From Lytechinus pictus (Eukaryota), in the NCBI RefSeq assembly GCF_037042905.1, contig NC_087245.1:43152001-43216000 (forward strand): DNA of 64,000 nt, written 5' to 3'. This document shows positions 6,344 to 64,000 of this stretch, piece by piece (within the stretch, counting starts at the first letter, position 1; each line of letters starts with the position of its first letter). The notes beneath the pieces were generated by a model that saw only the letters and a program-made list of their open reading frames with translations, was not told the origin of the DNA and did no database searches. The translations under genes and the position numbers were made by a program.

Positions 6344-6579
6344 ATTAGTACTAGGCATTAATTAGACAGGTCCAGATTTGAGGTAAAGTTAATGCGCTAG
6401 CCTAAGCTAGGAGATAGCCCTACCCTAGCACATGTCTTGCCATTAATGGCAGCTAGTTTATTAAGTGTTTAAGAATTTGATATATATATATATATAGATC
6501 TAAGCCTATAAGACCTATGTAACTATGTAAGGGTACCGGTAATTTGACGATGCTAATTTATTCTGAGCAACGTGAATGC

Positions 6580-6805
6580 TTACGATCGGCAGTGGTCGAG
6601 ACCAAGTCCACGCGCATGCGTACTCTCAATCCGAAGACGCAAGTCATGAATATTCATATGTTGGTCCAGAACTCGGTGGGAAAAATAATTTCGCAGCCGG
6701 GCCTGGCGGCGCGGGCCATGCGCCACCGTACCGGCACCCAGGCCGCCGGCCCAGCGCTCGCAATATCTTGAAGAATAATATTAAGAGTGACAGACCAGAA
6801 TCAGA
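6580..6805 (+). promoter_or_regulatory. CpG/GC-rich putative promoter and 5' UTR of SAM gene A
   Basis: Local GC/CpG-rich patch directly upstream of ATG 6806 in otherwise AT-rich DNA. Contains CGCGCATGCGT (NRF1-like). Confidence 0.45.
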
Positions 6806-6869
6806 ATGGCGACCTGGCAAATCTTATTAAAAGAATGGGACCATGAATACCTCATTGAAACTTTCGAAG
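6806..6869 (+). CDS. Element A accessory gene exon 1 (first half of SAM domain)
   Basis: MATWQILLKEWDHEYLIETFE followed by a G|GTGAGT donor in phase 1. Joins 11961 in frame. Confidence 0.75.
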
Positions 6870-9398
6870 GTGAGTTTCGTTTTTTTTTTCTTTGTTTTTT
6901 TACCTTGGTCTTTATAAATGTTAAACTTGAATGGCTGAAAATCAATTGGCCGACTCATAATCTACCGATGTTCGTAGAATCTAGCCTATAGGCCTACGGC
7001 GACGCCATTGAAGTTGACGGTACGCCCTGCCAGGCCCTGCCGGCACCGCGGGCCGCCCAGGCTTGGCTCAGCCAGGCTTTCGGGCCTAGGCGCATGCTAT
7101 TGTTGCCCAGGCCGTAGACCCTACATTGGCACAATGGATGAACCACTAGATTCTAGTAAATTTTCCAAGGTGAAGGGGGAGGGGGGGGGGATTGGGCGGA
7201 TAACCAATAATGTCAATACAAATTGCTATGTCTAACTAAATTAGCCATCACCATTTCTGCACTTATCATCTTCTAAGTTAGTTAGATCTAGTAACTGTTA
7301 GGCCTCACGGTAACGTTAGATCTATATAATCAACAGTAACACAAGTAACATCACACACAGCTGTTAAATTGACTCCAGACCAATCATGCCCTATATATAT
7401 CTAGATGATTTGTATTCCATTAGACTTCTGAATGACATTCATTGAATGAAAAGGGAATAGATTCTAGGGCAGTAAGGGGAAGGGGGGGGGCTAAGTTAGA
7501 CAGATCTCTAGACTCTAGCTTAGAACTTTCAAGATTAAGAGCTAGACCTAGAGATCTAGACCTTAATAGGCTATTTTTTTTTTTGGGGGGGGGGGGGAAG
7601 GTGTAAACCAGGGTCCTTTTTACGTGTTTTTTGTACACACATGATATCCACTTGTCAGTGAGAGTGACCCCGGCCCCCCCCCCCCTTCTCACCCCCTGGG
7701 TTTGTAGTATGCAGGGTGCTCCTAGCTGGAACATATGACATGCACAAATGCTGTCGTTATATTAGATGCAAATAGTAAAGTAAGATTGTAAAATTACCCT
7801 ATGCATCATATTGCTCATTGGACTTACTGTACAAACTTGCCTCCCTATTTGTCATGTTTGTATCTTTCTCGAAGCCACAAAAACTCTCTTGCAGGCTTCA
7901 TATGTATTAGAAAGAAAAAATTGACATGATAATTTACGATGAGAATAACCCTTCATTACGCAAATCACTGACCTAAAAGGGAATGGAGGAATTAACAGTC
8001 AGTTCACAACTGTGTTTTTCCCCTTGAAAGGAATGAATAGTAAATAATATATATGTGTATGTTATGTGACATATATGTCATATTTTAATCCTTCTTAATC
8101 TGTTTTCACAGCTTGAGAAAATGAGTGAAAGTATATCGAACTCTGGTCCTCCCAGCCATCCTCCTCTTCCTCCTCCCCCTCCTCCCAGCCCTACAACTTC
8201 ATCTTCAATTTCTGTTTCTACTCCTCAATGTACCCCTTACCCATCTATATCTTCAATTTCACCTGTTTCTTCTGTATATCCCTCTGATGCTGTTTCTTCT
8301 GTATATCCCTCTGATGCTGTTTCTTCATGTACTCCTCAATCTAACCCTAGACGTATGTCTCATACCTCAATTTTTTTCTGAATATCCTTCTAATCCTGTT
8401 TCCCCTCGTGTATTTTTCCCTCATCCCTCTTCTATTTCTCCTTCGTCAATTCATCTATCTCTCCCTTCATTAGAACATATTCCTTTTCCTCCTTCCTTCC
8501 GTTGTTTTGCTTTTGTCTGTGTTGTTTTTCTTATTGTTCTCATAGTTCTTCTGATTGTTCTTCTTCTTATTCATGATTGTTAATTTTTTTTCTCAAAATT
8601 TATTTATTATTAATTATTACTATTTGACCCTATGTTGGTAGTCTTCCCAGGGAGGGGGGGGGGGGCATATTGGGGCGTGAACATGGTGAGTAATTTGTTT
8701 AATTTTTTTCTGCATTTCATTCAAGATGAAAAATAGATTTGTTATCCTTTATTTAAGCCTGAATCTCCCAGCAAAAGCTCATCAGCTATTATTGCTGGAC
8801 ATTTAACAGTCTGTCAAAATGATTTTCACCATAAAACAGAAATAGTTTTGTGAAGGACCATTGTCCTGCTGTGAATGTATACCACAAGCAAGAATGTAGA
8901 AGCTATCTATAACATTCATCCCGGGATGTTCCAATAGCTCCTGAACAAATTTTATTGCGAAGTAATATGTAGTGATTATCAAAATCTGCATACATTATTA
9001 TTCAACAAAAAAAAACCCTTCAGATCCCCGAGTACTAATGAACTCATTAGATTAGATTAAATCAAGAAAATCAGTGAAATATATTTTCTCCTCTCTTCAA
9101 TACTGAACTCCCTGAGTTGATACATTTACTTGTGCATCTTCTCCACCAACTTTTGAGAAAAACTTGCATTTTTTTGTAGAAATTCTATGTATTATAGCAA
9201 CAGATGTGCGTAAAATGAAATTGCATATTTTTGCCTTGTTAACACTTATCCCAAGAAACCTTTCTTCCATTCAAGACTCCAAAAGGAGTCAAAAGTGAAA
9301 TTGACAAGTTGTTTATCAATCAATATAAGCTATAAAACACAATGAAAAATATGCTTTATTGTGCTTTTCACTGGGCTGAAATCTATACTGTTTTTTTT

Positions 9399-10343
9399 GT
9401 CTCGCCTGCATAGCAGTGTGAGACTATAGGCGTCGCTTTTCCGACGGCGGCGGCGTCAACACCAAATCTTAACCTAAGGTTAAGTTTTTGAAATGACAGC
9501 ATAGCTTAGAAAGTATATGGACCTAGTTCATGAAACTTGGCCATAAGGTTAATCAAATATTACTGAACATCCTGCCTGAGATTCACGTCACATGATCATG
9601 GTCAAAGGTCATTTACGGTCAATGAACTTAGACCATGTTGGGGGAATCAACATCAAAATCTTAACCTAAGGTTAAGTTTTTTAAATGTCATCATAACTTA
9701 GAAAATATATGGACCTAGTTCATGAAACTAGGACATAGGGTTAATCAAGTATTACTGAACATCCTGCATGAGTTTCACGACACATGATCAAGGTCAAAGG
9801 TCATTTAGGGTCAATGAACTTTGGCCGAACTGGGGGTATCTGTTGAATTACCATCATAACTTTGAATGTTTATGGATCTGATTCATGAAACTTAAACATA
9901 ATAGTAATCAAGTATCACTGAACATCCTGTGCAAGTTTCAGGTCACATGATTAAGGTCAAAGGTCATTTAGGGTCAATGAACTTTGGCCGAACTGGGGGT
10001 ATCTGTTGAATTACCATCATAACTTTGAATGTTTATGGATCTGATTCATGAAACTTAAACATAATAGTAATCAAGTATCACTGAACATCCTGTGCAAGTT
10101 TCAGGTCACATGATTAAGGTCAAAGGTCATTTAGGGTCAATGAACTTTGGCCAAATTGGGGGTATTTGTTGAATTACCATCATATCTCTGTAAGTGTATT
10201 GGTCTAGTTCATAAAACGTGGACATAAGAGTTACCAAGTATCACTGAACATCTTGTGCAAGTTATAGTAGGTTTCAAAGTCAGCACTGCTGCTATATTGA
10301 ATCGCGTGATGCAGGTGAGACCACCAGAGGCATTCCACTTGTT
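9399..10343 (+). mobile_element. Helentron/DINE-like (Tsp/pearl-type) element with internal tandem repeats
   Basis: Sub-TIRs GTCTCGCCTGCAT / ATGCAGGTGAGAC, a short (GGC)n tract, 163-bp tandem units containing AGGTCAAAGGTCA (9791, 9954, 10117) and T-rich flanks. Confidence 0.65.
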
Positions 10344-10484
10344 ATGCTTTTGACCAGAGTTTAAGTTACAAATAAAGTTTTAACATACCTTACATTGCGG
10401 TTAATATTAAGACGATAAATTCTACATCGTAATTTTATATTTTTTTTTATTAGGCTGACTTGTCATTAGTATTCTCTAGGTTTT

Positions 10485-11885
10485 GTCTTGCCTGCATAGA
10501 GCGAGACTAGAGGCGCTGCTTTTCCGACGGCGATGGTGGCGCCGTCAACATTGAAATCTTTATAACCAAGGTTAAGTTTTTGAAATGTCATAAATTAGGA
10601 AGTATTTGGACCTAGTTTATGAAACTTGGACATAAGGGCAAACAATTATCACTGATCATCCTGCATGAGTTTCCAGGTCACATGATCAATACAAGGACAA
10701 GTCCACCTCAACAAAAACTTGATTTGAATAAAAAGAGAAAAATTCAACAAGCATAACACTGAAAATGTCATCAAAATCGGATGTAAAATAAGAAAGTTAT
10801 GACATTTTAAAGTTTCGCTTCATTTCACAAAACAGTTATATGCACATCTTGGGCGGTATGCAATTAAATGAGGGAACTGATTACATAACTATTTCTTTTG
10901 TATTTTATTATATGAAATATGAAATATTTTGATTTTCTCGTCATTGTCATGTGAAGTGTCTGTCATTCCTCCCTGAACACGTGAAATTCCATTCTAACAT
11001 TTTGTGCTTCAGGCAAGGAGGTTCTTATCGTCAAATTCATAAAAATTGAAATATTGTATAATTCAAACAATAAAAAACAAAAGAAATAGTGAGTGACATC
11101 ATCGACTCTCTCATTTGGATGTAACTGGCTCGTTCATGTAACTATTTTGTTAAAAATAAGCTAAGCTTTGAAATGTCATAAGTTTCTTATTTTACATCCC
11201 ATTTTGATGAAATTTTCAGCATTGTGCTTGTCTGATTTTTCTCTATTGATTCAAATCAACATTTTTCTGAGGTGGACTTGATCTTTAAGTGTAGGCCTAC
11301 ATGTAAGGTCATTTGGGGTCAATGAAATTAAAATATGCTGATTTTTTTTTAAATGTTCATAATAACTTCAAAAATATATGGACCTAATTCATGATACTTG
11401 GACATAGGGGTAACCAATTATTACTGATCATCCTGCATGAGTTTCCAGGTCACATGATTAAGGTCAATGTACTTAGAAAATGCTCAAATTTTTCTCATGT
11501 TCATTACTTTAAAAGTATAAGTCATATTTCATGAGACTTAAAAGGTTATGAAGTATTGCTGATAATCTTGTATGAGTTTAGGTCACATGATCAAGATCAA
11601 AGATCAATAAGGGTCAAACTTTGACCATGTTGGGGTGACATCTCTGAAATCTTATTCTTATATAACATTTTTAATTTTTAAAGAATATTTTGCAAGTAGG
11701 CTCTATATCCTTTTCACATAAATCAAGTATCAGCAAATGGACAAATGTGATCTCAGGTCAAAGTCAAAATGTTACATTGTATAAGGATTATCAAATGAAT
11801 GTGTACTTGTTTCCCTCTCTATTTTACATGTAGTTGTTTTCAAAGTCAGCACCGCTGCAATAATGAATCGTGTGATCCACTTGTT
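10485..11885 (+). mobile_element. Second, degenerate copy of the same Helentron-like element, interrupted by a MITE
   Basis: Starts GTCTTGCCTGCATAG, has the same core repeats and ends CCACTTGTT like copy 1. Confidence 0.55.
10694..11284. mobile_element. Kolobok-like MITE (TTAA target)
   Basis: TIR AGGACAAGTCCACC / GGTGGACTTGATCT followed by TTAA. Same family as 39393-39996, in the opposite orientation. Confidence 0.75.
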
Positions 11886-11960
11886 TATCATAAATGTGAA
11901 GTACTAAACATTTAAGCTTATTATTCATTTCTTTTCAAATATTTGTTTCTCCACAAACAG

Positions 11961-12070
11961 TCAATGGAATTGATGACGATAGTTTCTGGCTGTTGGAGAG
12001 TGAGGAAATTAAAGAGCTTATTCCAAAGATGGGACCTAGGCTAAAATTCACCAAAAATGTCTCTGTACAG
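11961..12070 (+). CDS. Element A accessory gene exon 2 (second half of SAM domain)
   Basis: CAG acceptor, reads (V)NGIDDDSFWLLESEEIKELIPKMGPRLKFTKNVSVQ, then CAG|GTATGA donor. Matches the SAM pattern F-x-x-N-x-I-D...L-L...K-E-L-I-P-x-x-G-P-R-x-K. Absent from the ORF track. Confidence 0.8.
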
Positions 12071-12574
12071 GTATGACTACTTTGTATTCTAGTTATTAAA
12101 GCCTGTGTATAGTTTTGGTAAATCAACCAAAATGCACCTATCACTATTCCAATTTATTGCTAGCTAATATGAATGGATATGCCCTATAACATTTATGAGG
12201 TGGAGGATATGAAATGAAAATGTATTTTACATGATAAATTTTGCGATTTTACATGAAAATTTAACTTGATCGGGTGCCCAATCAAAATAAAATATCTGCT
12301 TGTATATATATATATGTTTTTTGTCTTTTCAATTTCAATTAAAACCTATTCCAGAGCATTGAATGGGTTGAAACTTTCTGGATATATTCTTCTTCTGTAA
12401 TTAAGGATATCTAATCTCTAAATTAGATAAGTGCTTAAAGACAATTTTTTTTAATTTAAAAACAAGCATCGCCGAGAGAGGGCGCTGATATCCAAGATTT
12501 TAATATTTGAAATTTTCTCAGAAGTGGTGGTTGGAAAAATATCTAGCGGTCTCTACGCTTTAGTAAGACTTTTA

Positions 12575-14217
12575 TATTAAATGATCTTGCTCTATGCAGA
12601 TGATTTTGAAACAGCAAATCCGTTAGGATCAAGGAAAGGTATTCATAAGCTCACAGCTTTTTACACATCAGTATTGTCTTTGCAAGCTACTAGTAAGTTT
12701 AGATCCAAACTGCATAACATAATGCTAGCTGCATTGGCACCAATCCCATTAGTAGTGAAGTATGGGATCGACAGCATCATTCAAGTATTGTCAGCAGAAC
12801 TGGAAAGAATTGAAGCAATAGGCATAGATGTACATAGGCCAGGGGAATTCGTTGGTAAAGTAAAACCTTTTCTGTTTCAGGTTACAGGTGACAATTTAGC
12901 ACAAAATCAACTGTTATGATTTGTTGGTAGTTTCTCAGCAAATCATTTTTGTCGCATGTGCAAGATGCACAGAGATGATAGTAAGAAAGCAGCAGTTGCG
13001 AACAAAAATCTCCTGAGGACAAAAGCGAACTTTGTTGCAGATCTTGAAATAAAAAACCATTCAATCACTGGAGTGCAAAGAAACAGTCCCTTGAATGCTC
13101 TACCAAATTAACATGTCACTCATAATGTAGCCGTTGACCTGATGCATGATTTCCAAGAGGGCATCCTACCTTTAGAACTAAAGCTGATACTGGGAAAGGT
13201 TGTTGCTGATAAATCTATATATATTGAAAACCTTTAATTTTGGATTCAGTGACAAAAGCAACAGACCTAGCCAAATACAAGCGTCTCAGCTTTCAAACCC
13301 AGGTGGTGCAAGTGGTCAGACAGCTGCACAGATGAAATGTCTCGCCCTTTATCTTCCATTGATCATAGGTGATAGGATAGAAGAGAAATCTGAGTACTGG
13401 GAGTTGTACTTATAGTTGATTGATATCTTCAAAATGATAATTGCACCAATAATTAGCAAAGCTGCTACATATCTATTATCAGACATTATTGAAGAACACC
13501 ATGAAGCATTTCTAATGCTGTTTCGGGAGAGAAAATTGACTCCCAAACAGCACATTTGCCTACACTATCCACATGCCATTAGACAACTAGGCCCTCTAAT
13601 GCAATTCAGCTCAATTAGAATGGAAGCAAAGCACAAAGAGTTGAAAGGTTGGGCAAAATCATCCTTCAACTTCACCAATATAGCAAAAACACTGGCTTTG
13701 AGCATGGACCTATTTGTGATAGGTCCATGCTTTGAGACACCAAAAGGCACAAGCTTTCCATTTCCGCTTAGTGCAGCATATTGAGTCTGAAAGTATTTTA
13801 GTCAATAATCAGCACATAGTGACTGCGTCCAACCTGCCAAATTCTGAACAAGTATGTCAGGTACTGAACTGTGAGTTAGATGAACCAATCATTACAGCTC
13901 GTTCTGTTGAACTTAATGGATATACTTTCAGGCCAGGTGTCCTTGTTCTAACAAGTTGGAATGAAGAGCCACAATTTTCATATGTTGTTAATGTGGTAGT
14001 AAAAGATTCTGCTATTGCTCTGTTAGCACAACCATGGGTCACTGAATATTTCTATGAACATTTTGGTGCATATGCAGTGAAGGAATCTGAGCAAGCTGAT
14101 ATGCCATTGCAAGTGATAACCCCATCATGTTTGTTTGATCATAAGCCATATGCAGTCCGTTGTTTTAACTTGGGAGACCCGCACTTGTATGTTATTACAC
14201 ATTTCAACTTGGCTTAA
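12575..14217 (+). pseudogene. CACTA/EnSpm transposase A, 5'-truncated, with stops and frameshifts
   Basis: Motifs LYADDFETANPLGSRKGIHKL, GDNL, FSANHFCRMC, DLMHD..EG, TPKQH..LHYP..IRQLGPL...RMEAKH and C-terminal HFGAYAV, spread over five broken ORFs. Confidence 0.85.
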
Positions 14218-14345
14218 ACTAACAGTGATTCAAATTTATGGTACACAGAACACAGTATGGATGTCAAAGCCTCATTGAAGGATACATGTATATTGAACAT
14301 TATTTTCTTTTGATATTCTCTCATATATATTGCCTTGTCCCATAG

Positions 14346-14603
14346 AAGTTAGAAACTATGCCTGCATCAAGTCTTCTTGGACTTAATGAGCAGAAAGCAG
14401 AAGAAACTGATACATCACTGTGCATCACTTTGGCATCAGAAAGTGACTCTCCATCTGCTGACATGCAAAGCTCGAAAGGCTCCTTGGCAGATACACTTGT
14501 TATTGAAGCATCCTCGTGTTCCAGTCTTTCAACCCCTGACAACTCTGTATCATCTTTTGCCAGTCATGACCAGCCAGTCTGCAGTCGAGCTTGTACAAAT
14601 TTT
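14346..14603 (+). CDS. Element A accessory gene exon 3 (Ser-rich linker)
   Basis: TAG acceptor 129 nt after the transposase stop, 258 nt open (KLETMPASS...RACTNF), then GTAAGT donor. Phase 0/0. Confidence 0.65.
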
Positions 14604-15066
14604 GTAAGTTTACTTCTATAACAATACTAAACGTTTTACATACCAATCATTTACCCCCCCCCCCCCTCTATCTTAGGGGCAATATAACCAAAAAGAAAAT
14701 AGGCAAAATTGTTTTATTTTTCCTCAAACATCCATTATCAACATACCTTGGAAACTATAAGTTGACACTGACTTTTACCCCATTTTTTCCAGAATCCCCC
14801 TTAGTCCAGTAAATGTGTATTAGATATTAAAATATGAAAGAATGTGGCTGCCTGTATTATTTAGAAAGTTACTGATGTTCTCATAAAATAATGTACTGGT
14901 AGTGCCAAGGTTACATTCGCCGGCCTGTGACCTTACGCGAATCAAAATTATCCATTTTATGTATTACTATATGAACCATTTTCATAGAAGGGCATTATTG
15001 TTAATTATTTATTTGAAATTGTGTTCATATATGTTTTTTTTTTCTTTCTTTCTTGGTCCTCTCTAG

Positions 15067-15209
15067 GATGTCATCAGTATTTTGAAGCAAGCTTCTGGCG
15101 GAACTCGCCTTGTGGAAAAAATCCAGGCTGAATGCATGCTATCCAAGAAAAACAAAAAGCAGATGGTTGACATTTTGGCACAGCGGCTGATTTCTGTCCA
15201 TGGGCATTT
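15067..15209 (+). CDS. Element A accessory gene exon 4 (SAMD3-like)
   Basis: DVISILKQASGGTRLVEKI...KKQMVDILAQRLISVHGH. 143 nt, with the same length, phase and similar sequence as exon 17106-17248. Confidence 0.7.
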
Positions 15210-15640
15210 GTAATTTTGATAATACAACTCTGCGTGTACATTGTTTCTTTTAGTTAGTCTTGGTCTCTATTTCCTCTTCTGTTTCCTACTTTCCTATACA
15301 ATCGAAATAATTTTTTGCATGCAGACAGGTATATAATTTCATATTCTCAATATGAATGATACATTGTATATCAATATCAGGATAAATAAGAAATACCCTA
15401 CCTTTTGTATCCAAATCATTATAAGGCATAGTTTTTCATATATTTTTGGGTTGTTTATATTCAAAAGGTACTAATGTACCATGTTCAACAGGTTTTTTAA
15501 AAGTTTAGCCTTAAGAGATTCAGTATTTCTTTGTTTATAACTCAATTTTCATCTTTGCCATTTATAGAGCATACATGTAAGTTTTTCAAGAATGCAAATT
15601 CTTTAAAGACATTACAGGGGGAAAACTACATTGATATCAA

Positions 15641-15938
15641 TGTAATCCACGAGAGGAAAAACACTGACTTCAGCCATGTGTACTGTGTCTTGGTAAAAAA
15701 ATTTGAACCAAATCAGGTCTATGCCATCATCGAAGGAAAGGTGGTTGAAACTAAAACTATCACTGATGCAGTTGATCTGTGCTTTAAAGCTTGTTATGCC
15801 TACAATCTGGAATATCAGGCGCAATGCTCAGCAACTTGGGAATTTCTTCAGAACATTGTATATGAAATGCCCGGACAGGTAAACTGTCCTATAATCAGAG
15901 ATTTCAGGGCATTCCAGAAAACTCTTAAAGACCAATAG
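15641..15938 (+). pseudogene. Orphaned terminal exon fragment of SAMD3-like gene A
   Basis: AVDLCFKACYAYNLEYQAQCSATWEFLQ aligns with AVDTCYKAVYVLDLEYQPQCCGAWEFLQ in 22816-23151. It is preceded by a copy of its own 3' UTR (15426-15640 ~ 15938-16160) rather than by the middle exons. Confidence 0.7.
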
Positions 15939-17105: not shown

Positions 17106-20100
17106 AATGTAAGGCAAATCATGTGTGCAGATCTATCTGGCCAGAAAATCTGTCAGCGACTTGATCGTACAAAGATAATAAGCAAACAAGATAAGAAGAA
17201 AATGGTGCACATTTTGTGTGACCATATGGTTGCTAGACATGGATACAAGTAAGTATAAATCTATAGATTTTGTGAAATATGAGGTGACAATGATAAAATT
17301 GAGATGGAAAATTAGCAACTATGTATCCATAAATTTATGCTTCCTAATATTTATAGGAATTACTGTGTGGGCGGGCGGGTGGGCAGGCGGTCGGTCGGTC
17401 CGTTTCCGAATCTTGTGGGTTAAACTACTTTCTCAGTTTTTGAGCTATTGACTTGAAATTTTGCACATGGGTCCATGAAAATGTTTAGATATGCAAGATA
17501 CCTTTTCCCTCAATGCCAAACAATGCGTTGCCATGGCAATGGCATTAAAAAAAATCATGAAAAATCTTGTGGATCAAAACTTGTTGTGGATTATGTTTTC
17601 TGGTTGTCCGTCCGTCCATCTCCACTTTCGTTCTCACGATAACTTAAAAACCAGTCAACCGATCAACTTCATACTAGGCTCGAGGATACTTATCTGGGTG
17701 ACGATGAGCTGTTTAGTTTTTGGGTCCAAAGGTCAAAGGTCATATAATTCAATAAAATACATAAGAAATAGACCGTTCTCCAACAACTCAAAAACGTTTT
17801 GATGGATCAACTTCAAACTTGGCTCATGTGTGCATATACAAGTGACAATGATCTGTTAAGATATTTGGTCTCAAGGTCACAGGATTCAATCAAGTTTATA
17901 TGTTTGCTTTTTGGAGAAAAAGTTATCTGACTAGATTTCGAAGTCACAAAATCAAAGGTCCAGTATTTGTTATTTTTTGGAAATAGAAACTAGGATGTAT
18001 ATTTCGAGTCTAGCAGTGGCGGAGGCATACATTTCGACCGTGCGCTGTCGAAAATCCATCTAGTGTAAATTTTAGTGGGACTTTTCTTTTTTTGTAGATC
18101 ATGCTGCTGGCGGGGGTATTATTAATCACCGATAGTAATATGTCTACTTGTCATTGCCTATGCTAACATTCAATATAAGAGGCCAGAAGCAGCAGGTGCA
18201 TGAGGTGCAATGCACCCTCCCCACTCCAAATCAAAATTGAAGTCCACTTTTCAGCCACGAAATGGCTAAAACTTCTGTATTTAAGATGTGCAAGTAACCA
18301 TTCTCGCTCAATTAGTCAATTAGGGGTTTCTTGTGTTACATCCTTATCCAGTTTATGTCCACCCTGCCCCCCCCCCCCCACCCTCCACCAATTTTTGACG
18401 AATAGAAATAGATCTTAAATCTAGCTGTGAAGTGAGTAAAATATTTAATATTTTTCTACAATTTCATTCATAGACCATCTTCATTCATCAAAGAAGAACT
18501 GGCAAAGGCTATACTGGTTTCTTTCCCATCACTGAAAGATCCTAAGGGTGTAACAGGCTATGTGAGTACATGCATACACATTCACATTGAAGTATACTTT
18601 CCTTGTTTGGACCGTAATCCTTGAAACAATTCCATGTATATCAGTAGTATACGTATATTATTCTACAACAAACGGCTATTTCCAGGCCTACTACATCATC
18701 CGGAATTTTTTTTTTTTCATGTATGTGTACTTCCTAACCAAATTAAAGATTTTTTAGAAACTAATTTGGGTCACATAGTTTAAGATTAAAATGTCTTACC
18801 TGTAACCCAGGGGGCCACTCGTATAAAAGTTGAAAGCATCCTCATGAACACAAACACGGAATAAAGTTGCTTTTTGCAGCCACAATGTGGGCCCGTATTA
18901 AGGGTATCTAAATGGCACTATTTTTTTCAAGAAAAATGACAGGTTTTTTTTTCATTGTCAGTCCACATCAAGTGTAGTTTGTAACAGTTCACCATGATCA
19001 CAAATTAAAAATATGGATAATGATTGACACTGGGGTCAATATTGTAAACGTGTAAATCATGGCAGTGACCATCTCTTTTGACAACTTAAATATAATTTCC
19101 TTTCTGCTAAAAACACCTGCACATCAAATCACCATGATTCTGAATCTGAAGCTGTATACAGAGATGGATGTGCTTCAAGCTAAGATTTTTTCAATTATGC
19201 CCAGAGTCGTGCTAGGCAAACCATATTCGACTATTGGAATTTGGCATTATTGGTCCATCATGATCACCAACAGCTGAATTATTGCTGACACTAAAACCAG
19301 TTTCCGTCTCTAATTACTTCACTTTTAAAAAGATTTGCTTTTCAAAGGCACCAATAATTAGGCTTAAAACTTTTTTTACAAAAATATGCCCCCCTTATAA
19401 CATGTGTAAATCCTTTGTATGTCATACTATTTGAGAGACTATCCTTGTTAAGAGTATACCAAGCTCAGAAAAGGGTCAATTTTCAACTACTGTACCTTGG
19501 TAATCCTTGCTATATGTGGTTTCTGTAAATGCTTTTTCATGGATGTTACAACTTTTGTACATGAGAGCACCACCCCTGGACCTGTGATATTCCTACATTA
19601 TAATTACAGGAAAATTACTATTGTAAAGGCGCTACTAAAATGCCAGCTAGAGGATGCTTAGAGGACAGGGTGTCATACTTACGAAGAGAGTTCTACAAAA
19701 GTACTGCTAATGATGGTGATCGACCCCCGAAGAAACAAAAATGTGAATCCCCAACAGCCGGCCCATCCAACAACAAACTGGAGGGCATGGAGCATGAAGC
19801 TAAAGGTAATTATTTTGTTGGTATCTGTGTTAGATTGATGGATTGCAAGATGACCCGAACATAAGTACAAAAGATTCATAATGTGTCTCCTCCTGCATTT
19901 TTTCAAAGGTGGTTAAGTGTGATCTATATTCACACATTCTCACAGGTTTTTAAAAATCCTCTGGAGGGGTAAAATGTTAAGAATAAGTTAATCCAAAAAC
20001 ATTTTTTGTTTCAGGGAAGTTCAAGTTAGTGAAGATGATTCTTGAACAGAAAAGGTTTAACAGTGTATAATACTATAATGGGTCTTCTATTTGTGCAGTT

Positions 20101-23100
20101 TTTTAATCCAGAATCTGTGAATTGTATTTGAAATAATTGGTATTTATTTCTAAATTCTAGAGATACAAGAACCTACTGCTAAAATACAATGGATGAAAGC
20201 AAACACCAGTGAGGATGATCGCAACAAAGTTGTTGAGTACATGCGCGATACAGCTTTGTACAGACAACAATGGATCAAATCTAACAAAATGTCAGCAACA
20301 GAGATACTTGAAGAATATTCCCGTCTTGCGGACAGTGGGATGGTAAGACAATTTTATATACAATGTAATTGTATATTTGGATGGTGTTACTAGATTTGGT
20401 TTTTTATATTCCTGTAGTTTCTTGGTTTCCATGAGTCTGCTTTCCTAAAGAATTAATTTTATAGGGGAAAATGAAACCAATTAAGTGTTCAACTTGATTC
20501 ACCATTAATGGTAATAAATTAGACAATGTGAACATAAACTTCATGTACCTTCCAACCATGATCATCTTTATAAAAGTCCCTTTCCTATAGTGTTTGACAA
20601 AAATTAAGCAATGTATATTGGTCAATGGTCATGTTGGTTGTAGAATGCGTGTGTGTGCACCATGTAACGAAAATTATGTTGCTAATAGACATTTTCATGT
20701 ATACATTTACAACCATATTTTAAGTTTTAAGCAATCAAAATATTTCTATCCTTTGTACAGATTGAACAAGATTTTGAAATAGGCCTACTTCAAAATGTGG
20801 CCAGCAGCAGGTTATATCAAAATTGGAGTAAGACTGCAACCAAACTAATTGAGTGGTGCCCAAGGATTGCACCATATGCTTTGAAGGACTTACTTGCAGG
20901 AGAAGACGACCTTGAGGTAGATGAACTAAATACAGGTAATTGCATTCTTTTGCATTATAATAAAGTTTTTCATATTATAAGAAAGAACATGCAATAATTT
21001 TTTTTTCACAGTCCTAATTTAGGCATCTGGTATCTGCTCCATAAAACCGGCATGATGCTGGCAAACAAATCTGTTTATCGTCGCACCATTGTCATGGATT
21101 GGACATGTTGAAAGCCTCAACCTGGCAAAACAGATGAAATACACTATTTGATGTACTTTAAAAAGATCCTTTCTTATGTTACTGGCCATGTGCACCTTAG
21201 TCAAATTACTTCAGTGGATAAACAAAAACTTACCTTACAGGGTGTATCGAAAAAAGCAAACCCAACTTTGATCAATAATAATTTCAAAAATATAACTGTG
21301 GCAATAGTGGGGTTTATATCAACAGATAGATCAACTCATTACCTTTCTTATGATAGCACTCTTAGCTCGTCATGCTCATGCATCACTGAACACCATTGTT
21401 CTGAAAAAAGTGTTACAAAATTTCAAGGGGTTCACTCTCACGCATCTTTCATTTTCAAAATTAAACTTTTTTATGATGAAGACAAAATGATGAAACATAT
21501 CAACAGTTATTCATTTTCAAACTTTGTTTATTTTTCTTCACTTCTTGATCATTTCTTTTTTAAAATGTCTGTAACAAATAAGAATAAGTCTCTGAACTCT
21601 TCAAGCTAATGCTGTAAAAATGAGAAAGAAAGGGTGAGTGTGATGAAACCAGATTTTTTGCTTAAGGTCTTAAGGGGGGGGGGGGAGTGTCAAATTGACA
21701 CACCCACCCCCCCCCCCAGTAATCTCAAGCACTGAAAATGCCCAGTTAGAATAGGGTTAAATAGAAGTGTCTTTGAAATAAATCTGGGGAAAGAGACTGA
21801 TTTTTTGATATGTTAACAATTAATGAGATGTTTTTTAACGATTTTGTTACTGTTTTTTTTATTTCTTTATATTCAGAGCAAAAGAACAATCTAGCCTTTG
21901 GCTTGTTACCAGTACTATTTCCAGGTAGAAGAAAGGGGAAAGGGGGCAGATATTCAACCCGGGAAGCACAACTAGGATTCATAGATGTCCAAAATGTAAG
22001 TTGGGTCAGCTTGCTTTTTTTTTAATTGTAATGCTGTTTGGTCCTGTTAGTTAGCATGTTATAAAGTGTGTATCTTATAGTGGAGATTCTAGATACAACA
22101 GAGGCTCAATTCTGTTGCAGCTTAGGAGAAATCTCTAATTTTGCGAGAGACATTTGTATTGTATGTATGATTCTGATCTGGTTACCCACACTGTTTAATG
22201 CAAATTCCTTGAAAATAAATTTTGATTCTCATAACCACTCTCACAAGAATTGATTTTGTGATTCTCGTAAATTGAACATTTCTTTATGTGCAATTACCCG
22301 GTAAAAACACTTAGACAGTGTGCAGCTTTCCCCCTCCCCCCCCCCAAACTTAGACAGAATCAGGAACATGAATCACGAACCCATAAAAATGGCTTGTGTT
22401 CAATCAAAAAAGTCCCAACTTCCTGATTTGTTCTAGACATGAATAATAAATTTATAAATCGACATAGTTCATTCTTCACATCGAGCAAATGTCATTTCTT
22501 TCAGCGAAGAGGACTACGTGTAGTGCAAGTTCCTGATCAAGAATGGATAAAATATGCTTGAACTTGAACATGTTTTGTTTCGGGAAAATAGCCACCTCAT
22601 GTCATGTGACCAGCCAATGGTCAGGGTCAGTAACTCTTGGTCAACGGTGTGTTCCATGAATTTTGATTCAGATTTTTATTTTTTTTTCATTTGAAGATCT
22701 GTACTTAAGGTAATCCTGGCTTGAATTATCTATCAAAATTATATTTCCTGCCAATCCAGTTCTGAACCTCTTTTGCATGAATATTTTTCTCTTTTTCTCT
22801 CATTCTTCTGTTCAGGAAAACCTTGCACTAGACAAGTTCCTGGAAGATATTGTACCTGAAAGTCGACCTCAATCGTTCATACTAGTCATTGGGTCTCTCC
22901 TTAAACCAGTGCAAATTTTCATCATTGTGGAAAGGCGGGCATTGGAACAAAGTAGCTTAATGAAAGCCGTAGATACATGCTATAAAGCAGTGTATGTCCT
23001 GGATCTAGAATACCAGCCTCAGTGTTGTGGTGCGTGGGAGTTCCTACAAACATACATTTATGAGATGAAAGGAGCTGTAAAATGCAGTGCGATCAGGGAG

Positions 23101-23151
23101 TTCAGAATCTTCGAGACAGCCTATGAGTCAATAATGAATACCAACATCTAA
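17106..23151 (+). CDS. SAMD3-like accessory gene of element B, seven in-frame exons (412 aa, no own 5' exons)
   Basis: Exons 17106-17248, 18474-18561, 19610-19805, 20161-20342, 20761-20935, 21877-21995 and 22816-23151. All are AG/GT bounded with compatible phases; total 1239 nt with no internal stop. Motifs LAKAILVSFPSLKD..GY, MRDTALYRQQWI, IEQDF, YVLDLEY..WEFLQ. Confidence 0.8.
17330..18062 (+). mobile_element. Degenerate Helentron/DINE-like element(s) in an intron
   Basis: (GGCG)n/(GGTC)n/(GTCC)n microsatellites, GGTCAAAGGTCA core motifs, 3' end ...CCATCTAGT. Boundaries are approximate. Confidence 0.45.
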
Positions 23152-47710: not shown

Positions 47711-49049
47711 ATGGACCAGCTTCTTATCAGTTGGGGCCTAAGAGGGCTGCAAGATATCTTCAAAGGTACCTATCTAATAATCAACTTGTATATAAAAAGG
47801 TTGTTTAAACGAATTTGAACTTGAAGTCTCGAGAATTTGATTGAGAGTTTAACCTATAAAACCGCAGTGTGTTGACTGCATGGCTGTGCCTGGCTCAGTT
47901 TCATATAAGGCCAGAGTAGATCTAACTTAGAAATCGCAAGTTGTAAGATTTGCCATCGAGGCTTTGAGTTACGATTAAAATGACCTATTGATTGTATGAT
48001 TGATATCAATCGTAGCTCAATGATTAATGGTAAATCGTGTACTTTAATAGGTGTAGAATCTAGCCTGTAGAGAAGTTGTGTGAAACGAGGCCCTGGGCCT
48101 GGCTGGCTATATAGCTGAGACTGCAGCCTTTGCACCCCAGGCCAGCCGGCCAGGCCTTGTAATTGCCTTGCAAAGCTTGGTAGCTTTAGTTTTTTATTCA
48201 GCTATTGCCGTTTTTAAAGTATGGTTAGTGGATTGTAAATGTATATATATCATTGAGGAATGTATATCTTTGACTGATATTATATTACTAGATCTGTCTC
48301 TTCCTCGGGGGCTTCTCATTTTACGGTATTGACATTCGTCGTCAGCTCCCCTTGTTAGAGACAGAATCACAGATGTCTTTCGATCCACACGCCAGTCAAG
48401 CGAGTCAAGCAGAGTGTGAGTAGGTTAATTCGCACTGAAGATTGCCTCAATATTGCCTTACCAATTTTTAGGAAAGGCAATTTCTCTCCCCACCGCTGTG
48501 AAAAGCATCAACATATGATATCTGATATATTGCACTTTAAAATAATCATTACACATAACAGCAGTGGCGGATCCAGGATTTCATGACGGGGGGGGGGGGC
48601 AGATCGCCGATTCTCAGATTTTGGTAGACCCCGGCCGAATTGGGGTTAAAATCGGGCCGCTCGAAAGTGCTCTCAGTGGGGGGGGGGGGGGGGTAGGGCA
48701 TGAATTTTTTTTGCCCTTTGGCCGTCAAAAAAACTACACACAATATTTTTTATGGTCATAATCCGGCCGGATGAAAGTGCTCTCAGTGGGGGGGGGGGGT
48801 GGTATTATAAGCATTACAAAAATTTCAAGCCAACAAACGCATAAAAAAATATGCATTCTCCAAAACGATTTTTTTTTTGGGGGGGTGGGGGCCGGGCCCG
48901 TCCGCCCCCCCCCCCCTGAATCCGCACCTGAACAGCTAGAATTAAGTCAACATTCATTTTTAGTAGACCTGTCTAATAAATGAAATATTACCAAAATCAC
49001 ATCGTCTTGCTTTCTTTCACAGAAAATGGGATAGACCTTGAAGCAGCTG
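47711..49049 (+). pseudogene. SAM-domain exons 1-2 of element Y, exon 2 disrupted by element Z
   Basis: Exon 47711-47765 MDQLLISWGLRGLQDIFK (phase 1) and exon from 49023 (E)NGIDLEAA. Same intron position as gene A. Confidence 0.7.
48562..48930. mobile_element. G/C-run-rich MITE
   Basis: TIR CAGTGGCGGATCCAGG / CCTGAATCCGCACCTG, with AACAG on both flanks. Confidence 0.7.
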
Positions 49050-50193
49050 CACTGAAAACTTTTCCGAGTCCGAGATGGGTCAGTCGACTCACTTGCAGTG
49101 AGTAATTTGCTTTGACACATTTATACGCGTCCATTTACACAATCCCCGACAGCAGCGACCCACGCGTGATGAGTCATTCTATAATTAACCGGCAGAAACG
49201 ACCCATGTGTGGCGAGACCAGGCGAGTCGATACATTTGTCTGTGAGTTTCTTGACTCATTCAAAAACCAAAGTGAGTCACACATACGATGCAGAATTGTG
49301 ATTGGTCAAAAGTAAAAAATGTGGATGCGCGCGCACGCACGTCGCGTCGTCGATATGCATCCGGTGGACATTTTGAACCATACATGGCTGACCAGACAGA
49401 GGAAGGATCTGGCATTCTGGGCGGGAGTTTAAACAGGTAAATTCTACATTTTAAGAGTCTATGTTTATATGAATAGGGAATGCGAATGCATCAGCAAATT
49501 CCAGTTAGTCCGTTAGGTACAAAATGTAATTTTCATGACAAGTATTTTTCTTTAGAAAACCTTGTCACTTGTGCTTCGACTATAGTTTGTAACTGTAAGT
49601 TTAACTTTTCGCGGGTCTATATACACGCGCTACTCCTAATGCATATGGAGCCCAAATAATGCATTCACTTAACAAGCCACAAAAGGCACCGTGACTACAC
49701 AAACGTGTTTGAGTTCAAACTTCAAAATACTTCATTTTACGGCTGGAGAAAGCCAGAAGCAGCCAAGGTGTCAAAAAGTATGATTGAAATTAAGCTAATC
49801 AGTGTAGGCCTAGACTTTGTTTAAGACCTAACGTTAAATGTAAGTTAGGCCAAGTTCTAAGTAGATCTAGGGCTAGGCCTAGCCTACATGCATAATTTCT
49901 CGTGATACTCACAACCGGACCGCCAGATACATGTACATGATGTATCATGTATGTACTTTAGCTAGCGCCGGCGCCTATAGACCTACATGTATGATGTGTC
50001 ATGTGTGCTTGATAGTACACATGGTCTAGATCTACACACACACACACACACACACCCTCACCCACAGACAGAGCCCAGTGCATGTGTGTATAGTGTGCGC
50101 ATATTAGCAAATTGGTAGGCAGGAGAGTCAATTCTCAAGCAGGGTAGAGTAATTCAGTCACTTGTAAAGATAATCCAAAAAAAAAGATAAGAT

Positions 50194-52856: not shown

Positions 52857-53167
52857 ATGGCAGCTGCTCCTAATGATGTGAACCAGGCTATTCTTGTGTA
52901 TTCATGTGTTTACTGTCAGTATCAGACAGGTAAACTAAATAAATACTTAAGTCATCTAGAGTACGTCCACCAAACAGAAAGGGGATTTAGCGTCACATGT
53001 GGGATAGAAGGTTGCCAAAAGAAGTATTCCATTGTTCGCTCACTTTCACGTCACATAAGAAGGAATCATAACATTAACATAGGCCAATGTGTAGCTATTC
53101 AACATGACAGGCCAAACGATAGTGATGGTGATGAATCCGATGATGGATACATGCATTTGCAGGAAGG
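52857..53167 (+). pseudogene. Two C2H2 zinc fingers, probable N-terminus of the element Z transposase (remainder deleted)
   Basis: CVYC...HLEYVH and CGIEGC...HIRRNH followed by an acidic tract. The ATG lies 29 nt after a GTGAGT donor at 52829. Confidence 0.6.
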
Positions 53168-60945: not shown

Positions 60946-62517
60946 TATGAGACAGGAAACCCCCTTGGGATCCAGGAAAGGCGAACATAAACTGGTTGCA
61001 TTTTACATCAGTGTCTTAAGCTTACCAATAAAATATCAGGCTTCACTAAATAACATTCTGCTTCCTGCATGTGCCAAGAGGAAAGTTGTTAACAAATATG
61101 GTATAGACAGTGTTTTGTCAGCAATAGTGGACGATCTCCAGGTGCTTGAAAAGGAAGGTCTTGAAATTTCAAGCACTGACTTCAAAGGGATTGTAAAACC
61201 TGTTTCATTTCAGGTTATTGGTGACAATCTGGGTCTCCATGAATTGCTTGGGTTTGTGGGAAGTTTCAGTGCTAATTATCCTTGTCGCTTTTGTAAGGCC
61301 CCAAAGGAAATCATCCGTAGACAGCTCACCCCCGACTCGGCACTTCTACGGAGCAAAGAGACCTTTCATGAGGATCTTGCCCTTGATGATACATCAAGAA
61401 CTGGAATGAAACGTTAATCAGAACTGAATAATCTAGAGCAATTTCATATCAATGAAAACTATGCACCAGATATTACTCACGACTTCTTGGAAGGAATCAT
61501 GCCATTAGAAGTCAAACTGGTCTTGAATTCACTCATTGACAAAGAACAGGTTACACTTCAACAGGTGAATGACCGCATATCTTCCTTTAACTATGGGTTT
61601 GTAGACAAAAAAAAAAAAAGTCCTATCCCGCAATCGGCGCTGAAGAATCCTCGTGGAGCTAGCGGTCAAAAAGCTGCATAGATGCGATGCCTGTATCTTC
61701 CCATCATGCTTGGAGATTTGATTGATGAGTCATCAGATGAATGGGAAGTTCTACTATTGGCTGTAAATATTTACAAGATTGTAGTAGCCCCATACATCAC
61801 CAGATCAGCTACTTTTTTCTTGAAGGCCCTCATTAAGGACCACCATCAACTGTTTCTTCAAGTGTTTGATGGATCTCTTATTCCAAAACATCATTTTGTT
61901 GTCCACTATCCTCAGTTGATTAGGTTACTTGGCCCACTTGAACAATACTCAACAATTAGGAAAGAAGCGAAACACAAACCTTTTAAGAGTTGGGCGCGTG
62001 CTTGCAATAACTACAAAAATGTGGCCAAGACTGTATCAAGGAGACATCAAGAACAACAAAGCTATGTGTTTCTCCAAGGAAAGACCCTTTCTTCTGAGAT
62101 GGACATAAAGAATCAGTTTCCAGCCCATATATCAACATTTGAAGAAGCACAACATATTTTGCTACACTTGATTGTTCACAAGATGAATTCATCCATGTAG
62201 CAGATAAACTGACTGTTCACAGCTATGAGTTTAAGCTGGGGTGTTTGGTGTTGACAGAATGGGATAAAAATGGATCCGTGTGTGCTCAACTAAAGAATAT
62301 GATCATACACAAGGCAGTTGCCCTGTTTGTCTTGCTTGTGTACGAAACAGAATACCACCACAGACATCTACAGGCATATGCTGTGTCAGAATGTGTGGGT
62401 CGAATCAAATTCATGGAACCATTAGATCTTCTAGTGCCTCGTCCTTTGCATATGGTTCGATCACTTGATGTTAATGACAAGTTCAATTATATCATTACAC
62501 CATTCCAAATTGTATAA
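60946..62517 (+). pseudogene. CACTA/EnSpm transposase Y, 5'-truncated by element Z, with stops and frameshifts
   Basis: YETGNPLGSRKGEHKL, GDNLGLHELLGFVGSFSANYPCRFC, DITHDFLEG and IPKHHFVVHYP..IRLLGPL..RKEAKH. Colinear with transposase A. Confidence 0.85.
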
Positions 62518-62549: not shown

Positions 62550-62933
62550 GTTCAAGAGCAGCAAGCACAGGACCTGGTGTCATTACCAGCTAATTTACAG
62601 CTACCAGTAACCCTAGTCATGTACGAGATGAACTTACCAACAGCATCACCATCATCATCGTCATCATCGTTATCCTTCACCAACTACTCAGCAGCTACTT
62701 AAAACCACCTACATCTGGGGGATTATGCTATCTGCAGCACTGATGAGGCAATTTCAATCCCATCTACATCAGGATCTTCACCATTGTATTCAGAACCACC
62801 ATCAGATTCCTGTCCATCGGGGCCAGATCCTGGCCCATCTACTTCAGCTAAGTCTGCTAAGCTAAGTCAACGGTCATCAGCAGAAGGACCAAATACACCC
62901 CCACCACTTAAGAGACAGAAGGCTTGTTTGTTT
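62550..62933 (+). pseudogene. Ser/Pro-rich exon 3 of element Y accessory gene (disrupted)
   Basis: CAG acceptor 33 nt after the transposase stop. Ends KACLF|GTGAGT like exon 3 of gene A (RACTNF|GTAAGT). Contains an internal stop or frameshift. Confidence 0.55.
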
Positions 62934-64000
62934 GTGAGTAACAAAATCAAATAGGGGCATTGATCTTTCTGTCATTGAGACTAATTCCTTATGAAGAGAA
63001 GGAGATTTAGATCTAAAAAGATGTACTTTAAATCAAATTTAATTCCATTTTTATTTCTAGTAACTGCTGAATGAATGATTATTCAGATTTGAGACATATG
63101 TAAACAACTATAATGAATCTGATTGACTGGAAAATTGGCACATACGTAAAACAAACAAGTCGAGTAGAATGAGAATTAAAAAAAAAAAATTAGCATTATT
63201 ATTATTTTTTTTTATTAATTAGAATTTTGAATATGCAAATTTTTGACGAAATTGGGAGAAAATTGGGATTTTCGTCTAAAATCAAAAGAAATTACAGGAT
63301 TTCTTCAGGTTTTCTGCAAAAGTCCTTTCAAATGATGTTATCTATCATATCCAAGTTTTTTATGCTGTTGAAATGTGTCACTAATTTGCATAAATATGCA
63401 AATTAGTATTCCCGGATTTATACACTTGTTTTCATTCTTACGTATTCTATTGGTTTTTTTTTGTTGTTCTTTGAATTTTTTTTAAAGAAGAATTTATCGC
63501 TCAAATGTATGAATTCAACTAATAACAAAGAAATAATCCAAATTATAATTCGAAGTAACAATAATAACAGATTTGGACTGAGATTACATGGCATCGGATA
63601 TAGGAATTACATAGAAACCTGTACAAAAATTACATTTTTTTGTGACGGACGAGCAATTTATCGACCTGTAAAATCAGTTCTACATGTCCGACCGGGGTGA
63701 ATTATATATCAAAACATGCGGGAGAATTGAGAAAAAAATGTCATGAAGTTTGAACGTGAAATTCCAATCGCTCTAGGTGCACGTCAAAAAACCGACAGGA
63801 GGGCCTAAAAGGCCCCCCTAATGGGATTAGGGTTAAGATCCCCATCAGAGGATCATTGAAAATTTGAAAACACGTAACTTTTGAACGTATTGTCAAATCT
63901 TGCTCAAATTTTAAGTTTGTTCATTTCATTTTCCTCATTTACTGACAGGGGTAGCTTTGCCATTAAATACATAGGTACACAACTTTTTGGGAGTGACTTG

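What the first reader, a model, noticed from the sequence alone, without database searches (positions are those of the whole stretch)
6806..15209. Two-gene CACTA architecture: transposase nested on the same strand in intron 2 of a SAM-domain accessory gene
Seen: in element A the order is SAM exon 1 (6806), SAM exon 2 (11961), intronless transposase (12575-14217), Ser-rich exon 3 (14346), then SAMD3-like exons. Element Y independently repeats this order (47711, 49023, 60946-62517, 62550), with the same phase-1 intron inside the SAM domain and a similar exon 3 end. In element Z a zinc-finger ORF begins 29 nt after a splice donor. Established: in maize En/Spm the TnpD-specific ORFs lie in a tnpA intron, TnpA binds subterminal repeats, and SAM domains often polymerise. 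Inference: the SAM/SAMD3-like protein is the animal functional counterpart of TnpA. A splice choice would set the transposase/accessory ratio, and SAM polymerisation could bridge the two repeat-coated ends.
Basis: partly seen in the sequence, partly recalled or inferred. Interest (0 to 1): 0.8.

Follow-up and report, generated by a model that had tools for sequence, protein, structure and literature searches.

The report
Animal CACTA transposon with SAMD3-like partner gene
The window holds two dead copies of a sea-urchin cut-and-paste transposon whose transposase sits inside an intron of a second, SAM-domain gene; that second gene travels with this transposase in fish and insects too, and its only reviewed (Swiss-Prot) look-alike is the vertebrate protein SAMD3.

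Summary
In element A the pieces lie in the stated order with canonical GT/AG sites and an open 191-codon spliced frame. Element Y repeats that order but is broken.

Both window copies are relics. The "transposase" of A lacks its first ~292 residues; an unrelated common repeat sits there instead. It also has three in-frame stops and two frameshifts.

Intact relatives show that the layout is a real design. A 13,991-bp element in the same genome (Lytechinus pictus, two 99% copies) has CACT termini and TTGGGTAAA subterminal repeats. It carries SAM exons 1-2, an 831-aa zinc-finger transposase, then nine accessory exons. The same nesting occurs in Strongylocentrotus, Apostichopus, Holothuria, a cave fish and a springtail. 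A moth has the two genes in tandem instead.

Contigs from a PacBio RNA library show two donors joined to one exon-3 acceptor: one skips the transposase, the other lies just after its stop codon.

The N-terminus is a SAM domain at family level. The whole protein is collinear with SAMD3.

Unproven: DNA binding, SAM polymerisation and a TnpA-like role. I found no paper that links SAMD3 to transposons. This is a new variant of a known kind.

The parts
6806..6869 (+). Element A, accessory gene exon 1 (SAM domain, first half; phase-1 donor GTGAGT)
   Evidence: Sequence. Joined with exon 2 it scores 60.7 bits against the family SAM profile A3.
11961..12070 (+). Element A, exon 2 (SAM domain, second half), ending at the proximal donor D1 (CAG|GTATGA)
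12095..12570 (.). Unrelated common interspersed repeat, lying where the transposase N-terminus (residues 1-292) should be
   Evidence: 565 candidate copies in the genome at 69-81% identity. The flanks match nothing else.
12581..14217 (+). Element A, 5'-truncated decayed transposase (residues ~293-830). The DDFE..NPLG, GDNL, CRxC and MHDxxEG motifs are kept. Three in-frame stops and two frameshifts.
   Evidence: Closest relative is Holothuria P0009 (54-70% identity).
14346..14603 (+). Element A, exon 3 (Ser-rich linker); acceptor CCCATAG
15067..15207 (+). Element A, exon 4 (start of the conserved SAMD3-like region)
   Evidence: Its homologue in the intact copy lies at L012:5479-5631.
15513..15938 (+). 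Last-exon-like piece of the accessory gene; the middle exons of A are missing
18421..23112 (+). Exons 5 to last of a second accessory gene copy, from a high-copy family
47711..47765 (+). Element Y, exon 1 (phase 1)
49023..49058 (+). Element Y, exon 2; only the first ~12 SAM-like codons remain
52857..53072 (+). Zinc-finger N-terminus of a transposase ('Z'), 28 nt after a GTGAGT donor. Probably part of Y.
60959..62517 (+). Element Y, transposase residues ~304-825, broken into three ORFs
   Evidence: 61.5% identical to Asterias P0007.
62550..62948 (+). Element Y, exon 3, whose acceptor lies 32 nt after the transposase stop
   Evidence: 85% identical to S. purpuratus P0127.

Best explanation
Elements A and Y are dead copies of a CACTA/CMC-superfamily DNA transposon. 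Its single transcription unit makes two products.

- The multi-exon gene encodes an accessory protein of about 500-550 aa: an N-terminal SAM domain, a Ser-rich linker, and a ~390-aa SAMD3-like domain.
- The intronless ORF for a C2H2-zinc-finger DDE-type transposase (~830-860 aa) lies in intron 2 on the same strand. Its start codon lies within about 30 nt of the exon-2 donor.
- Splicing at that proximal donor removes the transposase ORF and gives accessory mRNA.
- Keeping the intron retains the ORF. In the intact L. pictus family this is done with a second donor placed directly after the transposase stop codon (TAG|GTATGC). Both donors join the same exon-3 acceptor.

Shown: the architecture, its conservation, the common termini and the two splice forms.

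Inferred (roughly 40% likely): the accessory protein acts like maize TnpA, by recognising the TTGGGTAAA subterminal repeats and using its SAM domain to assemble or pair the ends.

How the transposase is translated from an mRNA that starts with the SAM ORF is unknown. In most families it is in another frame.
For: - Intact L. pictus element, 13,991 bp, two 99% copies with different flanks. It has a 19-bp TIR CACTCTTAAAAATATTGGG and carries both genes.
- TTGGGTAAA occurs 12 times in the terminal 600 nt of the two ends and not at all in the interior.
- Three 99.9% copies of a 15.85-kb S. purpuratus element have the same layout and TA-flanked CACTCTTAAAA termini.
- In A. japonicus the 828-aa gene is nested in the 511-aa gene. 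The two are named isoforms X1 and X2 on the same contig.
- Astyanax and Folsomia show the same nesting.
- 22 of the 25 best non-self transposase hits in the genome have an accessory last exon 6-16 kb downstream on the same strand.
- RNA: PacBio RNA contigs give the junction L012 1946|4977. A 2,544-nt contig runs through the whole transposase ORF and then continues into exon 3. There is no depth over the shared intron 4517-4874.
- NCBI's L. pictus model P0101 uses the same exon 2 to exon 3 junction.
- SAM: the family N-terminal profile finds 51 PDB chains, all of them SAM domains; the best is ANKS6 at 1.3e-10. The fold matches at Z 8.5.
- SAMD3: Foldseek E 3e-12 with a full-length collinear alignment; the next hit scores 0.065. 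The nearest Atlas clusters are named SAMD3-like.
Against: - The window copies themselves are broken and unique, so nothing here functions now.
- The RNA evidence is from one library, labelled 'sea urchin metagenome'. It consists of assembled contigs about 2% different from the reference copy. Two raw RNA-seq runs of the species label gave no reads.
- A donor directly after the stop codon is not conserved in other families. In Y only 32 nt separate the stop from the acceptor.
- Exon 1 of the intact C11 copy has no in-frame ATG.
- In Cydia the genes are tandem, not nested.
- The accessory C-terminal domain has no recognisable DNA-binding fold.
- Pfam Transposase_21 is below its cut-off: 19.7 against 28.6 bits.
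Confidence: 0.75

Rival explanations
1. A host SAMD3-like gene happened to receive transposon insertions in its second intron, so the two genes are unrelated neighbours.
For: The window is a dense nest of transposon fragments, and A does carry an unrelated repeat in intron 2.
Against: - Both genes lie inside the same TIR-bounded unit. That unit is multi-copy in two sea urchins, and homology ends exactly at the termini.
- The same nesting occurs in families only 40-50% identical and in three phyla.
- Pairing is genome-wide, 22 of 25.
Confidence: 0.03
2. One element with two genes, but each has its own promoter. The splice junctions seen are by-products, and no splice choice regulates anything.
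For: - In Cydia the transposase follows the accessory gene in tandem.
- In five of eight families the transposase is in another frame with its own ATG.
- No contig covered exon 1.
Against: - The transposase ATG stays within about 30 nt of the exon-2 donor in all nested families examined.
- RNA contigs show exon-2 sequence continuous with the transposase ORF, and the ORF spliced on to exon 3.
Confidence: 0.15
3. The accessory protein is not a TnpA-like end-binding factor. It could be a regulator of another kind: an inhibitor of transposition, a factor that recruits or blocks host SAM-domain chromatin proteins, or an RNA-binding protein.
For: - No DNA-binding fold was detected in a confident model (pLDDT 91.6; best PDB Z 4.8).
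- The best SAM matches are to host scaffolds such as ANKS3/6, BICC1, tankyrase and polyhomeotic.
- A high-copy family seems to keep the accessory gene without a nearby transposase hit.
Against: - Subterminal repeat arrays need a reader, and the transposase's own zinc fingers may not be enough.
- Strict co-inheritance with the transposase across Bilateria argues for a role in transposition itself.
Confidence: 0.35

Closest known systems
Maize En/Spm (CACTA): tnpA and tnpD from one alternatively spliced transcription unit
   Same: - CACT termini and subterminal short-repeat arrays.
- One transcription unit.
- The transposase-specific ORF lies in an intron of the accessory gene, and splice choice decides which product is made.
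(Established knowledge; summarised in PMC1636069.)
   Different: - The transposase lies in intron 2, not intron 1, and is a single intronless ORF with N-terminal C2H2 fingers.
- The accessory protein is SAM plus SAMD3-like, with no similarity to TnpA and no PF03004 hit.
- The flanks show TA on both sides in 5 of 5 copies, rather than a 3-bp duplication.
SmTRC1, Schistosoma mansoni CACTA element (DeMarco et al. 2006, PMC1636069)
   Same: It is an animal CACTA element with several alternatively spliced transcripts. Among them are shorter, more abundant ones that lack the transposase domain and were proposed to be TnpA-like. That paper also lists S. purpuratus and Danio relatives of the transposase.
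   Different: Its short products (PrA, PrB) had no detectable relatives in other animals. Here the accessory protein is a large conserved family (5,654 representatives at E<=0.001) found in echinoderms, fish and insects.
Vertebrate SAMD3 (Q8N6K7, Q8C4H2)
   Same: N-terminal SAM domain followed by a ~400-aa domain. It is collinear over residues 9-505 with the transposon protein model (Foldseek E 3e-12).
   Different: SAMD3 is named as a host protein. The proteins here are multi-copy and lie inside inverted termini beside a transposase. Identity is only about 15%. Sequence-profile homology to a named SAMD3 could not be tested.

Membership tests
CACTA / En-Spm (CMC superfamily) transposon | Terminal inverted repeats beginning 5'-CACT | tested here: met
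   L. pictus C11 and C14 copies: CACTCTTAAAAATATTGGG, 19 bp perfect. S. purpuratus copies: CACTCTTAAAA / CACACTTAAAA. The own termini of window element A were not identified.
CACTA / En-Spm (CMC superfamily) transposon | 3-bp target site duplication (plant CACTA) | tested here: not met
   All five intact copies have TA on both sides and no longer duplication. From memory, 2-bp duplications are described for some CMC members.
CACTA / En-Spm (CMC superfamily) transposon | Transposase_21 (PF02992) catalytic domain | tested here: inconclusive
   - 19.7 bits against a cut-off of 28.6.
- 2 of 34 relatives hit PF02992, 2 hit DUF4218 and 1 hits Plavaka.
- BLASTP E 1e-6 to 1e-7, collinear over ~400 aa, to L. 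pictus ORFs that do pass the PF02992 cut-off.
CACTA / En-Spm (CMC superfamily) transposon | Subterminal arrays of a short repeat in both orientations | tested here: met
   TTGGGTAAA occurs 12 times in the terminal 600 nt of the two ends and 0 times in the 12-kb interior. The same motif is present at the S. purpuratus termini.
CACTA / En-Spm (CMC superfamily) transposon | Two products from one alternatively spliced unit | tested here: met
   RNA contigs show two donors joined to one acceptor. The A. japonicus products are named isoforms X1 and X2 on one contig, with one gene nested in the other.
CACTA / En-Spm (CMC superfamily) transposon | Accessory protein homologous to TnpA | tested here: not met
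   Pfam scans of 50 accessory proteins give only SAM_1, SAM_2 and DUF4769.
SAM domain | Sequence profile and five-helix fold | tested here: met
   - The family profile finds 51 PDB chains, all SAM.
- Model residues 25-90 match SAM structures at Z 8.5, rmsd 2.5.
- 8 of 50 members pass Pfam SAM_1 at E<=0.01.
- The window A peptide gets no Pfam hit on its own but scores 60.7 bits against the family profile.
SAM domain | Head-to-tail polymerisation | not testable with these tools
   The nearest solved relatives (ANKS3/6, BICC1, tankyrase, DGK-delta, polyhomeotic) are SAM domains described as polymer-forming, from memory. That is resemblance only.
SAMD3 | SAM domain plus a ~400-aa C-terminal domain, collinear | tested here: met
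   Foldseek E 3.3e-12, probability 1.00, model 28-533 against SAMD3 9-505; the next hit scores E 0.065. The nearest Atlas clusters are named SAMD3 or SAMD3-like.
SAMD3 | Significant sequence-profile match to a named SAMD3 | not tested
   Word-based searches returned only 'uncharacterized' names. No SAMD3 sequence was obtainable.
SAMD3 | Single-copy host gene outside mobile elements | tested here: not met
   The copies here lie inside TIR-bounded multi-copy elements. They are SAMD3-like transposon genes, not SAMD3 orthologues.

The most novel reading that the evidence does not exclude
A clade of CACTA-like transposons found across Bilateria is defined by a conserved SAM-domain accessory gene that hosts the transposase ORF in its second intron. 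An alternative 5' splice-site switch chooses between the two products. Vertebrate SAMD3, whose function is poorly understood, would then be a domesticated copy of this accessory gene.
Probability: 0.55. Interest if true: 0.75.

Novelty: new variant of a known kind. Interest (0 to 1): 0.62.

Why it matters
- Two-product CACTA elements are textbook material in plants. In animals the second product has been called 'a protein of unknown function' (PMC9191631) or thought to be lineage-specific (PMC1636069).
- This analysis gives that product an identity: a SAM-domain protein family with thousands of members, tied to the transposase in echinoderms, fish and insects.
- It gives a concrete, testable splice switch.
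- It offers an origin for SAMD3 and for the many 'uncharacterized' SAM-domain proteins in animal gene sets, which would then be transposon genes.
- It supplies natural intact copies, with defined termini and repeat motifs, on which the TnpA-like hypothesis can be tested directly.

Tried and rejected
- Pfam on each separate piece of the window's transposase and accessory exons gave nothing. The joined 58-aa SAM peptide alone gave no Pfam hit.
- Two word-based protein searches with accessory queries never reached a protein named SAMD3. Neither did two cluster look-ups.
- Foldseek against the PDB and a full VIA scan of the confident C-terminal model found no significant fold. The best was Z 4.8, to small three-helix DNA-binding domains, which is below the noise level.
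- A predicted trimer of the SAM domain gave no verdict. It counts neither for nor against polymerisation.
- Two raw RNA-seq runs under the species label laid no reads on the intact element, about 6% of each run being read. That is no test of expression.
- A donor directly after the transposase stop was looked for in other families and is not conserved there.
- The idea of a selected SAM-transposase fusion was rejected: frames agree in 3 of 8 families, which is the chance expectation.
- No other DNA-level copy of element A exists in the genome, so its termini could not be defined by comparing copies.
- The terminus-like AAGAGTG at 6777-6789, 17 nt before exon 1, has no obvious partner.
- Literature searches combining SAMD3, SAM or DUF4769 with transposon, EnSpm or CACTA found nothing relevant.
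Full report
**What is in the window.**
The window is G000:C1:43152001-43216000 of an 812-Mb genome. That genome is Lytechinus pictus: protein P0101, named for that species, lies on a contig of exactly the length of C14.

- Exon 1 is 6806-6869.
- Exon 2 is 11961-12070.
- Exon 3 is 14346-14603.
- Exon 4 is 15067-15207.

All four have GT/AG sites. A phase-1 intron splits the first domain, and the spliced frame is open for 191 codons.

Between exons 2 and 3, on the same strand, 12584-14214 is homologous to about 830-aa transposases. It is a relic, for three reasons:
- It starts at residue ~293.
- It has in-frame stops at 12917, 13109 and 13235, and two frameshifts.
- The stretch 12095-12570, where the N-terminus should be, is an unrelated repeat with hundreds of copies.

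After exon 4 the gene jumps to a last-exon-like piece (15513-15938). Exons at 18421-23112 come from another copy.

Element Y has these pieces:
- Exon 1 at 47711-47765.
- A stump of exon 2 at 49023.
- Transposase residues 304-825 at 60959-62517.
- Exon 3 at 62550.

The zinc-finger ORF at 52857, 28 nt after a donor ('Z'), is closest to the same starfish protein as Y. It is probably the N-terminus of Y.

**Is the order a design or an accident?**
The genome holds many open frames of 840-860 aa related to the A fragment.

The closest lie on C11 and C14. They are two 99% identical copies of a 13,991-bp unit whose homology stops at CACTCTTAAAAATATTGGG inverted termini flanked by TA. Inside the unit are:
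- exon 1 (c11 8534-8597);
- exon 2 (L012 1837-1946);
- an intact 831-aa ORF (L012 1934-4429);
- nine further exons ending at c11 19109.

The terminal 600 nt of both ends carry TTGGGTAAA 12 times in both orientations. The interior carries it not at all.

Other species show the same layout:
- In S. purpuratus, three 99.9% copies of a 15.85-kb unit with TA-flanked CACTCTTAAAA termini hold it. The 546-aa protein P0100 is its spliced product.
- In A. japonicus the 828-aa gene is nested in the 511-aa gene. The two are named isoforms X1 and X2 on one contig.
- The cave fish Astyanax and the springtail Folsomia have the same nesting.
- The moth Cydia has the transposase 11 nt after the accessory stop instead.

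Genome-wide in L. pictus, 22 of the 25 best non-self transposase hits have an accessory last exon 6-16 kb downstream on the same strand. A chance insertion into a host gene is therefore excluded.

**Splice choice.**
Contigs from a PacBio RNA library were laid on the intact element. They show two things:
- A junction 1946|4977 (GT..AG), which is exon 2 joined to exon 3.
- A 2,544-nt contig from 1917 through the whole transposase ORF to 4429, followed by 28 nt that are the start of exon 3.

The DNA reads TAG|GTATGC at 4427-4435, so a second donor sits directly after the stop codon and uses the same acceptor. There is no depth over 4517-4874. That fits RNA rather than contaminating DNA. NCBI's model P0101 uses the first junction.

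Limits on this evidence:
- It comes from one library, as assembled contigs about 2% different from the reference.
- Two raw RNA runs gave no reads.
- A donor at the stop codon is not conserved elsewhere. In Y only 32 nt separate stop and acceptor, so plain intron retention must serve there.

What is conserved is the position of the transposase ATG, always close to the exon-2 donor:
- 13 nt before it in the C11 family;
- 13 nt after it in A. japonicus;
- about 29 nt after it in the C8/S. purpuratus family and in 'Z'.

In Astyanax the transposase homology starts 26 nt after exon 2.

**The proteins.**

Accessory N-terminus:
- A profile of 20 family members finds 51 PDB chains, all SAM domains. 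The best are ANKS6, BICC1, ANKS3 and tankyrase.
- The model matches SAM folds at Z 8.5.
- The window's joined exons score 60.7 bits against that profile, though Pfam alone misses them.

Whole accessory protein:
- The model has pLDDT 84.
- Its only significant Swiss-Prot matches are human and mouse SAMD3, collinear end to end at E 3e-12.
- The nearest Atlas clusters are named SAMD3-like.
- The family is large: 5,654 representatives at E<=0.001. It includes many insect and fish 'uncharacterized' or 'SAM domain-containing' proteins.

C-terminal 390 aa: it folds confidently (pLDDT 91.6) but matches no solved structure.

Transposase:
- It has N-terminal C2H2 fingers and invariant D298, D392 and E480-type positions.
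- Pfam gives only sub-threshold Transposase_21, DUF4218 and Plavaka signals.
- It has a weak but collinear BLASTP relation to L. pictus ORFs that do pass the Transposase_21 cut-off and that lack the SAM gene nearby.

It is therefore a distinct clade of the CACTA/CMC superfamily.

**Comparison and novelty.**
Maize En/Spm works the same way in outline. An animal precedent for alternatively spliced short products exists in SmTRC1, but those products had no known relatives (PMC1636069). A recent paper still describes the second CACTA ORF as of unknown function (PMC9191631). Searches found no paper that links SAMD3 or SAM domains to these elements.

The TnpA-like mechanism (repeat binding, bridging of the ends by SAM) remains inference. 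The direction of the SAMD3 relationship is also inferred: the transposon-borne form has a wide taxonomic spread, while SAMD3 is named as a host protein.

**Verdict.**
- The architecture and the splice switch are supported.
- The function is unproven.
- The window copies themselves are dead.

Noticed in passing
G000:C1:43.016-43.320 Mb (includes the whole window) and C31:0.21-0.45 Mb: All transposase and accessory-exon hits of this superfamily in these two regions lie on the + strand: at least 8 of each on C1, and 5 of each on C31. These are one-directional graveyards, either piRNA-cluster-like or an insertion hot spot.
   Followed up: no
window 1-2033 and 23887-25923: A 2-kb block is repeated directly at 99-100% identity, 23.89 kb apart. 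It could be a segmental duplication or the two ends of a large element.
   Followed up: no
G000:C12:19099131-19126901: Ten tandem copies, period 3,059 nt, of a unit that contains an accessory last-exon-like piece, each with one TGA. The array lies 18 kb upstream of an intact element at C12:19145297.
   Followed up: no
window 22816-23112 and at least 12 other loci: A high-copy family shares an identical-scoring 145-codon last exon of the accessory gene, with no transposase hit beside the copies. It may be a non-autonomous derivative that keeps the accessory gene.
   Followed up: partly
L039 (Holothuria leucospilota) 4629-7235; L030 (Folsomia) 6132-8032: In these copies the SAM exon-2 frame runs without a stop into the transposase ORF, which would give a SAM-transposase fusion on intron retention. 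In five other families the frames differ, so 3 of 8 in frame matches chance.
   Followed up: partly
L031 (Cydia pomonella) 6001-14146: The same two genes are linked here, but in tandem: the transposase starts 11 nt after the accessory stop rather than lying in intron 2.
   Followed up: partly
window 2412-2695 and 6412-6702; 6777-6789: A ~290-nt inverted repeat pair (91-97% complementary) encloses 3.7 kb just upstream of exon 1. A CACTA-type right terminus (AATATTAAGAGTG) ends 17 nt before the exon-1 ATG.
   Followed up: partly
c11 8444-8597 (L012 444-597): Exon 1 of the otherwise intact C11 copy has no in-frame ATG. An upstream ATG (MDLEYDLDDDVDMDNPALDLG) is in another frame, so there is a frameshift or an unusual start.
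   Followed up: partly
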